Shown: in pieces, positions 60,216-64,000 of the stretch | Position numbering within the stretch: position 1 is the stretch's first letter | Layout: every line of letters starts with the position of its first letter | DNA from: Schmidtea polychroa | Taxonomy: Eukaryota | Reading direction: 5' to 3' | Assembly: GCA_044892525.1 (NCBI GenBank) | Contig: CM097885.1 | Location: 140,306,001 to 140,370,000, forward strand | Length of the DNA stretch: 64,000 nt | The notes under the pieces: model-generated | Databases searched by the model: none | Told to the model about the DNA's origin: nothing | What the model saw: the letters and a program-made list of their open reading frames with translations, nothing else | Translations under genes and position numbers: made by a program

Positions 60216-63200
60216 TTTTTTTATGAATTTTCGGTAATACCCACATAATCCTAGGAACTCTTGCACTTGCGTAACGGTTTTTGGTGCTGGACACGTTTTT
60301 ATTTTTTCGATGTTTCGTGGATCTGGTTCTTTTCCTTTGGCTGACACTATGTGTCCCAAAAACGTGACTTTTTCCTTTGCCCAATCGCATTTTGAAGGTT
60401 TGAGCTTGAGTTTCCATTGTCGTAATCGAATAAATACATTTCGGATATCCTCCAGATGTTGTTCAAATGTCGCTGAATAGATTAGCAAATCATCAATATA
60501 TACCATACATTGTTTGATTCCATGAGTGACAAAGTTCATACACCTTTGAAATGATGTTGGTGCGTTGGTCAGTCCGAATGGCATTTTTCTGAATTGATAT
60601 AGATCTCGTCCCAACGTGAAAGCGGTCTTCTCTTTGTCCTCATCTTTGACTTTAATTTGCCAGTATCCATTTTTTAAATCTAAAGAAGTAAAATATGCTG
60701 CCCCTTGCAACATGAGTAACATTTCATTAATGTCTGGCAATGGATAGGTATCCCTCTTTGTTACTGCATTTAATTTTCGATAATCAATACAGAATCTTTG
60801 CGTGCCATCTTTCTTTTTCACCATGACCACTGGAAACTGCCAAGGTGAGCAACTTGGTTCGATTACTTTTGCGTCTAGCATTTTCTGCACTTCTGCTTCG
60901 GCTATTTCCTTTTGCATCTCTGCTAGTTTGTATGGTCTTAATGCGATTGGAGTTTCATCTATCAGTGGGATTGCATGTAGGGTGACATCACATGTACCCA
61001 AATCCAAATCTGAGATGGCGAATATATCTTTATATTCCACTAACAATCGGTGCAATTTTCTCTTTTCGGCAGCTGTTAACAATGTACTGTCGATTGTCCA
61101 TAATTCGTCATTTTTGTTTACCTCGTTGGTCACTTTTGGTAGTTCTATATCCATCATTGGAGTCAATTTTCCCAATCTTTCATTCTCATAGATGATTTTG
61201 TCTTCCTCTTCGAAATTCGTGATGTTGATCGGTATCACTCCTTCTTGATTTATTGTTATTATTTCTCTAGCGAGCGGTAATTCTCGTCGCTTTTCAAATG
61301 ACTTACTTGGTTCGAAAATAACTTCTCCTTCCATTCCCGTGTCTACTTTTATCTGACAGATCATCTGTGATTTTGCTGGTACTATTATTTTCTCTGGACA
61401 TCGGATTACTGCATTCATTTTGCATATTCTGCCGGTTTTATCCTTTAGACACATGGTTGTCAAGTCGATTACTACTTCTTTTAGTAGTTCTGGCATTAAA
61501 TCTGTTCCGATTATGCATGGTACACTCAGTTTTGGTATTACTGCTAAATACGTTTCGATTTCGTTATCTTGGTATTTTAAGGTGGTCCACCATCTCCCGA
61601 CCACGTCTACTGTTTCTTTACTGCATGCTATGATGTGGATTGTTGTTGACTCGATATCTTTCCAATATCTACTGGGAATTTGATTAATTGCTATTGCTGA
61701 TACGTTAGCTCCGGTGTCTATCATAGCATTTGTTTCTTTTCCATTGATTTGGATCATGACTGTTACTGCCGGACCTCCAGGTAAACTCATTGCTGCTATT
61801 GTCCGTACATCGTCCGCTTGATCTACACTTCTGGTTCTCCTCGTTGGCATATAATTCATTCCAGATTGATTTGGTAATTGCGGATACATATTTTGTGTCA
61901 TATTCATTGGTGCTACTTGTTGTCCGACAATATCTGGTGGTATATAGCTTCCATTGGCTATCCACGTATTTGTTTTTTCCTTTTCCCAATATGGTGCCGT
62001 TTCAATTTGCTTTTCCTTGGGATGTCCACTGGGGTACGGATATTTATTGTTTCCTTCGTCGTCGTCGTCACTATCGCTGTTAGATGATTGACTTCTGAAT
62101 CGGTCCAAGAATTTTGGCTTGTTCTTTTTCAATTGTCTTCTTGTTGCTTCATCGTACATGGTTTTTCGGAATTGTCTACCTACTTCCTCGTCTGTTCCTT
62201 TAATCTTTGTTAAGATTTTAATCAATCGCTTTATTCGATGAATGTCTTTTGAGTGACCATGTAATACCATGGTTTTTGCTAAAAATGGTAGAAACCCTAC
62301 TATCATTTTCCAATTTACTTTCTTTTCTCTCTTGTATATATCGAAACATGCTAACATTTGTGTTAATATTACTCTGACAATTTGAATTATGAGTATGATT
62401 CCCAATATTCCTGCCATCATTTGTCCAAATACTAAGAATCTTCCCCACATTGCTTTCATCATATTTGACGTTGCGTGCTGGAAATGATCCGGTGATAGTA
62501 GTAGTTCGTAATTTGGACCTGATTGATAGTTTGTTCCCCCAGTTATGGTGACCATATTTGACAATATTGACTCACGTCTGGCTGGGAAAAGTATGTTTAG
62601 CCGTGCGGTTTCTAGATCCGCTGGTGAATACATACCTCCGTTTGATACGTCTATGGGCTTGAAGTCCTGCTCCGTGGCGAGTTCTATTAATCCAAACTTC
62701 TTAGGTTCCTCCACTGTGGCCCTTACCGGTAACATTATCCATTTCCCATCGGGTCTCTCGTACAATGGTCCGTACGCATTGGAACAGTTAAAGAGATTTG
62801 GATAGAAGCCTAATGGGTTCATAATTCTAGTAACTGGCTGGACGAATCGATTTTGTCCTTTATAACGAATTTCCAACTCGTTTGCGCATTTCCCTGTAGG
62901 TATTGTGGGTTTTTCTGGCATTCGTGCAAACGTCTTAGTGCACGCATACGTATACATCACTTCGCCCACCATCCTACCAAAATGTCCATCTGGTAATGGG
63001 AGTGATGGCATCGTATTATCAGGGTGCGTTATTGCGATAGCTAGTTTTGTTTTCAGTATCTCTTTATTTAATGAACAATCGTTTTGTATAAGATCGTAGT
63101 ATACTTTTTGCAGTGTCGTTTGTCCGCGATGGAATAAAAAATCCATTTTGTTGTTGGCGTATAGGTACAATTTGACGTCCTCCGTGGCTATCTTTCCCAC

Positions 63201-64000
63201 TGCTCTATCTATTATCTGTCTTGACATGTAGATCCCTGCGTAGTTGGTCTTGTAGACGATACTATCGCATTTGGTGGTCTCCTTTTCTCTGATGAATCTC
63301 ATACCCAGGTCTGGGTCGTCTGTGATCAGTGCCGTTGGTGTTTTTTGTGTTGCGAGCCTCTTTTCCCTGGGCGCGGGTGGTACTGGTTTCCCATTTCGCA
63401 TTCTCACCTTTCCATTTCCATCCTCGTCATCTTCGTTCTCATAAATTTCCCCTTTTACTTCATTGAACAGGGCACTTTTTAACAATTGGAGTCGGCATTT
63501 TTGGGTGTTAGCTTCATATATTATGGTCGAAACCCCCGTCTTGCATACGTTTTCCGTAGCCTTACATATGGGGTTGGTTTTCATTTGATAATTATTGGCG
63601 TCAAATTGTGCTTCGTATTCTTTTAATTCCACTGTATAGGACTCGATTACTACTACCCCCGATATCGCCTCTCCTCTGATCGTATACGTACCTCCGTTAC
63701 ATGTACCATCAGTTGATTTTACGCGTCCGGCTACATAAATGCTTTCGGTTTTAATCATTCCGCTTTGCCCGTGTATCGTTACTCCGTCTCGGATCCTCAT
63801 CGCTCCGGTTCTAAACAGTTCTTTGCAATCCTCTCTTTGTATAGGCACTATTTCTTTATCCAATCCGGGTAGTATGAGAGTTGAATATGAATATTGTCCA
63901 CAGTAATACGCCAACACACGTTTTGATACTACGCACTCCTTTGCCAGCGTCCTGATGAAATCCGATTCTTGATACACGTGATATGAGACCTTTTTGTTCA
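60216..64000 (-). CDS. Polyprotein N-terminal part (5'-incomplete): chuvirus-like class III glycoprotein, TM, aspartic protease, spacer, RT
   Basis: The frame is open to the window edge (NKKVSYHVYQESD...). Glycoprotein Cys pattern: YYCGQYS, DGTCNGG, NDCSLNKEILKTKLAIA, GEVMYTYAC, CANELEI...FVQPVTRI...C...GKW. TM MAGILGIILIIQIV; protease MIDTGANVSAI; RT SPWQFPVVMVKKKDGTQRFCIDYRKLN, YIDDLLI. A 1-nt excess in an A7 run (60216-60222) shifts the frame. Confidence 0.9.

What the first reader, a model, noticed from the sequence alone, without database searches (positions are those of the whole stretch)
61650..64000. Chuvirus-like class III fusion glycoprotein placed upstream of, and in frame with, protease-RT
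The Cys/Gly pattern matches the gB-like glycoprotein family of chuviruses. That family is known to have been captured as a 3' env by BEL/Pao elements (mosquito Anakin), and Ascaris Tas has a gB-like env. Here it is in a Ty3/gypsy-type pol (PR-RT-RH-IN order) and precedes the protease with no stop: ectodomain, TM, cytosolic linker, PR. This env-pol fusion would tether Pol to membranes and departs from the usual gag-pol-env layout. No gag or zinc knuckle is visible between env and PR. Together with the accessory genes, this looks like a complex, possibly infectious invertebrate retrovirus-like lineage.
Basis: partly seen in the sequence, partly recalled or inferred. Interest (0 to 1): 0.92.

Follow-up and report, generated by a model that had tools for sequence, protein, structure and literature searches.

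The report
Burro-like retroelement with in-frame envelope gene
The window ends inside a giant Ty3/gypsy retrovirus-like element whose chuvirus-type fusion glycoprotein really is fused in frame to protease and reverse transcriptase, but this gag-env-pol layout was already described in 2019 for the planarian Burro elements, so it is real but not new.

Summary
On the minus strand one stop-free frame runs from the window edge (63998) through a glycoprotein ectodomain, a transmembrane helix, a 190-residue tail, a retropepsin and the whole RT domain. The ectodomain matches Pfam PF24664 (E 9e-65). Its model (pLDDT 88) matches chuvirus G best (E 1e-29), then herpesvirus gB (E 7e-11). Pol matches Ty3 best.

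The junction is not a chimera. At least ten relatives (28-48% identity, several datasets) have G followed by PR in one frame; four run from G to integrase in a single ORF. In relatives, gag and a zinc knuckle lie upstream of G, beyond this window's edge.

The novelty claim fails. Arkhipova and Yushenova 2019 (PMC6431247) reported env in frame between gag and pol in planarian Burro elements, with MATH/TRAF, ankyrin and BCL2 motifs. Chary and Hayashi (PMC13524379) report GAG-ENV-POL elements in flatworms, nematodes and bryozoans. This element also carries ankyrin repeats and a MATH/TRAF ORF.

This copy has one frameshift in pol.

The likely mechanism is inferred, not shown: a polyprotein threaded through the membrane, with G in the lumen and Pol on the cytosolic side until the protease cuts it free.

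The parts
55421..64000 (-). Env-Pol polyprotein gene (G, TM, tail, PR, RT, RNase H, IN, ankyrin-bearing C-terminal extension). It runs off the window at its 5' end. It is broken by one frameshift in pol and has no in-frame stops.
   Evidence: tblastn with eight relatives gives exactly two reading frames over G-to-IN, whereas P0003, P0007, P0014 and P0017 carry G-to-IN in one ORF.
62445..63998 (-). Class III fusion glycoprotein ectodomain (chuvirus/Monjiviricetes G type). It is N-terminally truncated by the window edge and has 12 Cys.
   Evidence: Pfam PF24664 E 8.7e-65. 870 homologues. AF2 model pLDDT 87.6. Foldseek: Tacheng Tick Virus 4 G E 1.3e-29, TM 0.60; pseudorabies and HSV gB E about 1e-10, prob 1.0.
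62334..62444 (-). Transmembrane anchor of G, the only strong hydrophobic segment in the G-PR-RT frame.
   Evidence: Kyte-Doolittle 19-residue window, maximum 2.53, residues 519-555. The model shows a long helix over residues 503-559. The same segment is present in all relatives checked.
61761..62333 (-). Tail or linker between the TM and the protease. It is about 190 residues, hydrophilic, without Cys, and inferred to be cytosolic.
   Evidence: No Pfam family at E<=0.1. Only its first 26 or so residues are conserved in relatives.
61485..61760 (-). Retropepsin (PR) with the D-T-G motif.
   Evidence: PF00077 E 5.6e-11.
60822..61484 (-). Conserved PR-RT spacer. Its C-terminal half is the N-terminal part of RT. 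No dUTPase signal was found in the first half.
   Evidence: 27-37% identity to six relatives. The profile of A2 hits foamy-virus PR-RT, CaMV and Ty3 RT only at profile positions 122-220. No Pfam family at E<=1.
60345..60821 (-). Reverse transcriptase core (Y-I-D-D).
   Evidence: PF00078 E 4.6e-36. Ty3 RT 4ol8 E 7.7e-48.
58877..60121 (-). RNase H and integrase (H2C2 zinc domain plus catalytic core).
   Evidence: PF17917 E 6e-39, PF17921 E 1.4e-20, PF00665 E 2.3e-12. Ty3 Gag-Pol 7q5b E 3.8e-49.
56510..58024 (-). Ankyrin-repeat region after integrase, in the same frame as integrase.
   Evidence: PF12796 E 1e-19, three stretches. It is homologous to ankyrin blocks of L001 and L005-L007, which sit at other positions in those elements.
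55095..55469 (-). Accessory ORF, 124 aa, with a hydrophobic segment. Function unknown.
   Evidence: No hit in relatives.
53898..54671 (-). Accessory ORF, 257 aa, with a MATH/TRAF-C domain.
   Evidence: PF21355 E 2.3e-26, PF22486 E 4.3e-26. MATH_TRAF_C is a listed Burro motif.
51760..53701 (-). Two accessory ORFs (357 aa and 236 aa), rich in charged residues and looking like coiled coils.
   Evidence: no Pfam family. That they are coiled coils is my reading of the sequence, not a tested result.
51100..51720 (-). Accessory ORF, 206 aa, with a hydrophobic segment.
50359..50715 (-). A-rich non-coding stretch with short tandem repeats after the last ORF. The strand bias of the element fades near 50400, so this is the probable 3' untranslated end. 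No LTR could be delimited.
   Evidence: No second LTR copy in the window.

Best explanation
The window's right end holds the env-to-3' part (at least 13.6 kb) of a giant Ty3/gypsy endogenous retrovirus-like element of the Burro kind. In this kind a glycoprotein taken from a chuvirus/mononegavirus-type RNA virus lies between gag and pol and is read in the same frame as the protease. Shown here: the domain order is G ectodomain, TM, tail, PR, RT, RNase H, IN, ankyrin, followed by accessory ORFs that include a MATH/TRAF protein. The G has a class III fusogen fold. The G-PR junction is conserved in many diverged relatives. In relatives, gag and CCHC lie upstream and a signal-like hydrophobic segment directly precedes G. 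Inferred working: the polyprotein is threaded through the ER membrane. The internal signal sequence sends the G ectodomain into the lumen, the TM stops transfer, and PR-RT-RH-IN stays on the cytosolic face, tethered to the tail of G until the retropepsin cuts it free. This would bring Pol, Gag and Env together at the budding membrane. This particular copy has one frameshift in pol, so it is probably not autonomous, unless the frameshift is an assembly indel.
For: Frame and domains. Fold. Ty3-type pol; Pfam PF17917, PF17919 and PF17921 and no BEL/Pao families. Conserved junction: P0001, P0002, P0003, P0004, P0007, P0008, P0010, P0014, P0015 and P0017 all have G followed by PR in one ORF. P0003, P0007, P0014 and P0017 continue through RT, RH and IN. 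P0015 has Retrotrans_gag-G-PR, P0004 has CCHC-G-PR, and L007 has Ty3_capsid-CCHC-(weak Bcl-2)-G-PR-Ank. The nearest pol relatives (43-49% identity) are the same G-bearing elements, several with ankyrin. Topology: a single TM after the ectodomain here; in relatives a hydrophobic segment coincides with the start of the G profile (P0003 128-153, P0014 349-371, P0015 469-488, P0005 130-148). Literature: Burro has env in frame between gag and pol, plus MATH_TRAF_C, ankyrin and BCL2. The A/T-rich background fits a planarian-like genome.
Against: The host is not identified, and no deposited Burro sequence could be compared, so 'Burro-like' rests on architecture and motifs. In Burro1 the MATH domain is described upstream, inside ORF1; here it is a separate ORF downstream of pol. 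The dUTPase-like motif reported between PR and RT in Burro was not detected. BIR, BCL2, gag and the LTRs cannot be seen because the window ends inside G. The accessory ORFs have no homologues in the seven related loci or in the word-indexed protein search, so their belonging to the element rests on strand, adjacency and composition. The polyprotein topology and protease release are inference; splicing could give other products.
Confidence: 0.82

Rival explanations
1. Assembly chimera or chance juxtaposition: an endogenous chuvirus glycoprotein fragment (EVE) happens to abut an unrelated gypsy pol.
For: Chuvirus G EVEs are common in invertebrate genomes (PMC7642597 and PMC10084718, listed). The region is repeat-rich.
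Against: One uninterrupted frame crosses the junction, with no N run nearby. The same G-then-PR order in one ORF recurs in at least 10 relatives at 28-48% identity from different samples (ERZ25039515, ERZ893782, an NCBI MAG, JGI, Logan). G and pol find the same set of nearest relatives.
Confidence: 0.02
2. It is a BEL/Pao element of the Anakin kind (chuvirus G captured by BEL/Pao), not Ty3/gypsy.
For: Anakin is the textbook chuvirus-G capture (PMC7642597, listed). One hit, P0040, joins the BEL/Pao-type DUF5641 domain to G.
Against: The Pfam families are those of Ty3/gypsy (PF17917, PF17919, PF17921) and no BEL/Pao families appear. The best solved matches are Ty3 RT and Ty3 Gag-Pol. G is 5' of pol here, not 3'.
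Confidence: 0.02
3. The layout is as described, but G is not made as a G-Pol fusion. Splicing or another expression device yields separate Env and Gag-Pol products, and the shared frame is only compact packing.
For: Retroviruses generally express env from spliced RNA. In one relative (L005) the G ORF ends just before the PR ORF. In L001 the G ORF overlaps the preceding CCHC ORF in another frame.
Against: There is no stop between the TM and PR here or in at least 10 relatives. Frame continuity kept across 28-48% divergence argues that read-through into PR is selected. In P0003 the G profile ends about 35 residues before the first PR domain.
Confidence: 0.12
4. The G domain is a decaying relic with no present role, carried along by an ordinary retrotransposon.
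For: This copy has a frameshift in pol. Only one N-x-S/T sequon lies in the ectodomain part seen.
Against: The G reading frame is intact over about 560 residues. Eight alignment columns, including four Cys, are invariant and several more Cys are nearly invariant across 67 sequences. The model is confident. G is retained in many diverged lineages.
Confidence: 0.04

Closest known systems
Burro / GYPSM1 giant gypsy-like LTR retrotransposons of planarians (Jurka 2007; Grohme et al. 2018; Arkhipova and Yushenova 2019, PMC6431247)
   Same: Ty3/gypsy pol. An env homologous to mononegavirus-type fusion glycoproteins, placed between gag and pol and in frame with PR. Ankyrin repeats. MATH/TRAF-C motif. 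Very long internal region with accessory coding capacity. A/T-rich host background. The nearest relatives found here show weak BCL2-like and ubiquitin-like signals just upstream of G, as in Burro.
   Different: MATH/TRAF is a separate ORF downstream of pol rather than a domain upstream of env. The dUTPase-like motif between PR and RT was not detected. Gag, BIR, BCL2 and the LTRs cannot be seen in the window. No direct sequence comparison with Burro1-4 was possible. The host is not identified.
GAG-ENV-POL 'errantiviruses' of Platyhelminthes, Nematoda and Bryozoa (Chary and Hayashi, PMC13524379) and the non-canonical nematode ERVs of Sacco et al. 2022 (J Gen Virol 103:1739; paper not held, known here only through the citation and its title)
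   Same: A Ty3/gypsy backbone with a class III (gB-like) env placed before pol.
   Different: Those papers treat GAG, ENV and POL as three ORFs. Word searches of the eLife text for 'fused', 'same frame', 'single ORF' and 'frameshift' found nothing. Their screen accepted only LTR pairs 5-14 kb apart; this element is larger and carries accessory genes.
Anakin (mosquito BEL/Pao with a chuvirus glycoprotein; Dezordi et al. 2020, PMC7642597)
   Same: The same glycoprotein family (PF24664), captured by an LTR retroelement.
   Different: A different retroelement superfamily (BEL/Pao).
Chuviridae / Jingchuvirales G and herpesvirus gB (class III fusogens)
   Same: Sequence family (19-27% identity to free-standing proteins of about 650-700 aa) and fold.
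   Different: Here the protein is not free-standing. Its cytoplasmic tail continues into PR-RT. Retroelement-borne copies form the closer tier (28-48% identity).
Structural polyproteins of flaviviruses and alphaviruses (analogy of working only; from general knowledge)
   Same: A cytosolic capsid part, an internal signal sequence, luminal glycoprotein ectodomains and membrane anchors, all in one translation product that is then cut.
   Different: No homology. Here the downstream cytosolic part is a retroviral Pol. Processing has not been observed.

Membership tests
Monjiviricetes/chuvirus-type class III fusion glycoprotein (PF24664) | Sequence match to the family profile above the curated cut-off | tested here: met
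   219.3 bits against a cut-off of 27, E 8.7e-65. 417 homologues at E<=1e-10.
Monjiviricetes/chuvirus-type class III fusion glycoprotein (PF24664) | Class III fold (gB / rhabdovirus G / gp64-like multi-domain ectodomain with a central helix) | tested here: met
   Model pLDDT 87.6. Chuvirus G E 1.3e-29, TM 0.60. Herpesvirus gB E 7e-11, prob 1.0 over about 600 columns, with a low global TM of 0.34, which I attribute (not tested) to different domain arrangements.
Monjiviricetes/chuvirus-type class III fusion glycoprotein (PF24664) | Type I topology: N-terminal signal sequence, ectodomain, single C-terminal TM | tested here: inconclusive
   The TM is present. The signal sequence lies beyond the window edge. 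It is present in relatives at the start of the G profile.
Monjiviricetes/chuvirus-type class III fusion glycoprotein (PF24664) | Membrane-fusion activity | not testable with these tools
   No functional data exist for this protein.
Ty3/gypsy (Metaviridae) | Pol domain order PR-RT-RH-IN | tested here: met
Ty3/gypsy (Metaviridae) | RT, RH and IN closest to Ty3/gypsy rather than BEL/Pao, copia or Retroviridae | tested here: met
   Ty3 RT 4ol8 E 7.7e-48 and Ty3 Gag-Pol 7q5b E 3.8e-49 are the top solved matches. PF17917, PF17919 and PF17921 are present and no BEL/Pao families appear. No formal tree with reference elements was made.
Ty3/gypsy (Metaviridae) | LTRs, primer-binding site and target-site duplication | tested here: inconclusive
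   The 5' end is off the window. No LTR pair is in the window or in the related contigs.
Burro-like giant gypsy elements | env in frame between gag and PR | tested here: met
   The env-PR junction is in frame. The gag side is off the window but seen in relatives.
Burro-like giant gypsy elements | MATH_TRAF_C and ankyrin motifs | tested here: met
   MATH E 2.3e-26 and Ank_2 E 7.5e-18. Their positions differ from those described for Burro1.
Burro-like giant gypsy elements | BCL2-like, BIR and Ubi2/SUMO-like motifs and Gag with CCHC knuckles upstream of env | not testable with these tools
   That region lies beyond base 64000. The nearest relatives show weak Bcl-2 signals (E 1e-3, twice, just before G), a weak ubiquitin signal, and clear gag and CCHC.
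Burro-like giant gypsy elements | dUTPase-like motif between PR and RT | tested here: not met
   No PF00692 at E<=1. The profile of six relatives finds only RT in solved structures. These tools are less sensitive than the HHpred used in the paper.
Burro-like giant gypsy elements | Giant size (internal region up to 25 kb) and a planarian host | tested here: inconclusive
   At least 13.6 kb from G to the last accessory ORF lies inside the window. The host is not told, and three exact-product look-ups found nothing. The A/T-rich background is compatible.

The most novel reading that the evidence does not exclude
This copy represents an undescribed Burro-like family with a single PR, ankyrin repeats after IN and a downstream cassette of accessory genes (MATH/TRAF, two coiled-coil-looking ORFs, two small membrane proteins). 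The whole G-bearing clade, which also turns up in many metagenome contigs that carry no host name, makes a Gag-Env-Pol polyprotein threaded through the membrane. Pol would be delivered to budding sites by being covalently tethered to the tail of the fusion protein. No such mode of Pol incorporation has been shown for any retroelement.
Probability: 0.3. Interest if true: 0.6.

Novelty: already known. Interest (0 to 1): 0.3.

Why it matters
If the in-frame Gag-Env-Pol reading reflects the real product, it gives a different solution to packaging Pol and Env from that of retroviruses (Gag-Pol frameshift plus spliced env). It would also be a clear case of an RNA-virus fusogen becoming an integral part of a retroelement polyprotein. 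That idea is already in print for Burro. This window adds a further example with a different arrangement of accessory genes. The searches also show that the G-PR fusion recurs in many diverged elements from several datasets. For annotation, the region should be labelled a Burro-like Ty3/gypsy element, not a host gene or a chuvirus EVE.

Tried and rejected
1. Sequence search of the G part against solved structures found nothing; only the fold search gave gB.
2. Host identification failed. Rfam gave no hit in the window. Exact-product look-ups of three accessory ORFs found nothing on record. The MATH ORF had no word-sharing homologue.
3. A metagenome scan with the G protein found no close relative.
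4. Searching for LTRs by self-comparison found no pair for this element in the window or in six related contigs.
5. The accessory ORFs gave no tblastn hit in the seven related loci.
6. The dUTPase-like motif was not found.
7. Sacco et al. 2022 is not held in the library, and no supplements are held for the eLife paper.
8. The chimera and BEL/Pao readings were considered and rejected (see rivals).

While working I also reasoned about whereabouts the frame changes. I noticed this afterwards.
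Full report
**What is there**

The feature is on the minus strand. The frame that enters the window at base 63998 is already open there. It stays free of stops through a glycoprotein domain, a hydrophobic anchor, a hydrophilic tail, a retropepsin and the whole reverse-transcriptase domain, ending at 60345.

- Pfam places PF24664 (Monjiviricetes_fusion, 'viral fusion glycoprotein') on the first 556 or so residues, at E 8.7e-65.
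- RVP matches residues 747-838 and RVT_1 matches residues 1060-1218.
- The only strong hydrophobic segment of this frame is residues 519-555.
- The 190 residues between it and PR are hydrophilic, have no Cys and match no family.
- The D-T-G and Y-I-D-D motifs can be read in the translation.
- Downstream in the same gene come RNase H, integrase (H2C2 plus core) and then, still in the integrase frame, a long extension with ankyrin repeats.
- Five further minus-strand ORFs follow. One is a clear MATH/TRAF-C protein (E 2.3e-26).
- The strong A-richness of the coding strand runs from the window edge to about 50400 and then fades.

At least 13.6 kb of the element is therefore in the window. No assembly gap is nearby.

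Yes. An exhaustive HMMER search with residues 1-560 found 870 homologues.

- The nearest tier (28-48% identity) is glycoprotein domains embedded in very long proteins.
- The second tier (19-27% identity to the query) is free-standing proteins of about 650-700 residues, the size of chuvirus G.

An AlphaFold2 model built on 67 of these sequences is confident (mean pLDDT 87.6).

- Against predicted viral structures, its best matches are the G of Tacheng Tick Virus 4 (E 1.3e-29, TM 0.60) and other chu-like viruses, a xinmovirus, nyaviruses and rhabdo-like viruses. Herpesvirus gB comes after these.
- Against solved structures, the top 50 listed matches are all herpesvirus gB (pseudorabies virus gB 5ys6, E 7e-11, probability 1.0, about 600 aligned columns).
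- Plain sequence search against solved structures found nothing, so the link to gB is by fold only.

**Is the junction real?**

Yes. Pfam scans of the long relatives show the same order again and again:

- P0003: G-PR-PR-(PR)-RT-RH-IN in one 2,855-residue ORF.
- P0007, P0014 and P0017: G-PR-RT-RH-IN.
- P0010: G-PR-RT-RH.
- P0001, P0002 and P0008: G followed by two PR domains.
- P0004: CCHC-G-PR.
- P0015: Retrotrans_gag-G-PR.
- The 2,713-residue ORF of L007: Ty3_capsid-CCHC-(weak Bcl-2)-G-PR-ankyrin.

These sequences come from several independent datasets: two ENA assemblies, an NCBI MAG wrongly binned as Flavobacteriaceae, JGI and Logan. The integrase-side search returns the same elements as nearest neighbours (43-49% identity), several of them with ankyrin repeats. 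A chimeric assembly or a chance neighbour cannot explain this.

**Where is gag?**

It would lie upstream, outside the window. In L001 the order is a Retrotrans_gag ORF, an ORF with a CCHC knuckle, then G. P0015, P0004 and L007 have gag or CCHC in the same ORF as G.

By alignment to P0001, the window lacks the signal sequence and roughly 35-50 residues of the ectodomain. In P0003, P0005, P0014 and P0015 a hydrophobic segment coincides with the first positions of the G profile. This means G's own signal sequence is kept even when it lies inside a longer ORF.

**What kind of retroelement is it?**

It is Ty3/gypsy.

- Ty3 RT (4ol8, E 7.7e-48) and the Ty3 Gag-Pol polyprotein (7q5b, E 3.8e-49 for RH-IN) are the best solved matches. 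Caulimovirus and foamy-virus enzymes come next.
- The Pfam families are those typical of Ty3/gypsy, and no BEL/Pao families appear.

**State of this copy**

Eight relatives aligned by tblastn to the G-to-IN region each give exactly two reading frames. In four relatives the same region is one ORF. Pol in this copy is therefore broken by one frameshift. There are no in-frame stops, and G, PR and RT are unbroken. Whether the frameshift is real or an assembly indel cannot be told from the sequence.

**How it probably works (inference)**

The internal signal sequence, the ectodomain, the single TM and the hydrophilic tail that runs into PR fit a polyprotein threaded once through the ER membrane.

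- Gag and any upstream accessory domains would be cytosolic.
- G would be luminal.
- PR-RT-RH-IN would be cytosolic and tethered to the tail of G until the retropepsin releases it.

This would gather all virion parts at one membrane. The topology is analogous to the structural polyproteins of flaviviruses and alphaviruses (general knowledge, with no homology). Nothing here shows processing, particle formation or fusion. A spliced env message remains possible.

**Comparison with what is known**

The architecture is already in print.

- Arkhipova and Yushenova (2019, PMC6431247) re-annotated the giant planarian gypsy-like element Burro (GYPSM1). [quoted passage not shown] - They listed MATH_TRAF_C, ankyrin, BIR, BCL2, Smc, a ubiquitin-like motif and a dUTPase-like motif, and suggested that Burro elements are integrated proviruses.
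- Chary and Hayashi (PMC13524379) report GAG-ENV-POL Ty3/gypsy elements with gB-type env in Platyhelminthes, Nematoda and Bryozoa, and chuvirus-like glycoproteins next to gypsy POL in arthropods. They cite Sacco et al. 2022 for nematodes.

The element in the window shares env in frame with PR, ankyrin and MATH/TRAF. Its nearest relatives show weak BCL2-like and ubiquitin-like signals just before G. It differs from the Burro1 description in three ways:

- MATH/TRAF is a separate ORF downstream of pol.
- There is only one PR. The Burro description lists PR once too, but the metagenomic relatives have two to five.
- The dUTPase-like motif was not detected.

I could not compare it directly with deposited Burro sequences or name the host. 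The A/T-rich background agrees with what is reported for Schmidtea, but that is not proof.

**Verdict**

The identification of the glycoprotein and of the pol type is correct.

What may be new is modest: possibly an undescribed member with a different accessory-gene arrangement, and evidence that the G-PR fusion recurs widely in diverged elements.

Noticed in passing
window 18876-23801: A 106-nt direct repeat pair (96% identical; 18876-18981 and 23696-23801) flanks a small Ty3/gypsy pol ORF (19749-21845, minus strand: PR-RT-RH-IN zinc domain) and a Tc1/mariner-type DDE_3 transposase ORF (22006-22782, minus strand). This is probably another LTR element with a nested DNA transposon.
   Followed up: partly
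window 46105-46482 (-): A 125-aa ORF matches protein-primed family-B DNA polymerase (PF03175, E 1.6e-9). It looks like a fragment of a Maverick/Polinton-like or similar element.
   Followed up: no
window 46800-48200: A GC-rich island (up to 53% GC in a roughly 30% background) holds two long overlapping antisense ORFs (47372-48181 plus strand, 47419-48168 minus strand). Only the minus-strand ORF was scanned, and it has no Pfam hit.
   Followed up: no
window 33965-36289 (-): A 774-aa ORF with no Pfam family at E<=0.01.
   Followed up: no
L001, L002, L003, L005, L006, L007 (ENA ERZ25039515): The related elements carry two to five retropepsin domains each, spread over several ORFs, and ankyrin blocks at different places (before PR-RT or after IN). 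L002 has an RNase_T exonuclease ORF after pol. Several diverged families come from this one sample.
   Followed up: partly
P0104 and P0040: P0104 joins immunoglobulin domains to a full G (1,000 aa). P0040 joins the BEL/Pao-type DUF5641 domain to G. These are other contexts in which this glycoprotein family has been fused.
   Followed up: no
P0007 = HBK71150.1: A G-PR-RT-RH-IN polyprotein of 2,627 aa is deposited as a hypothetical protein of a Flavobacteriaceae MAG. It is most likely eukaryotic retroelement DNA binned wrongly.
   Followed up: no
window 50359-50715; L001 2457-4217; L006 22359-22778: Short-period tandem repeats (20-45 nt in the window, 41-42 nt in the loci) lie in the non-coding ends of the elements. 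The Burro figure legend also marks tandem repeats.
   Followed up: no
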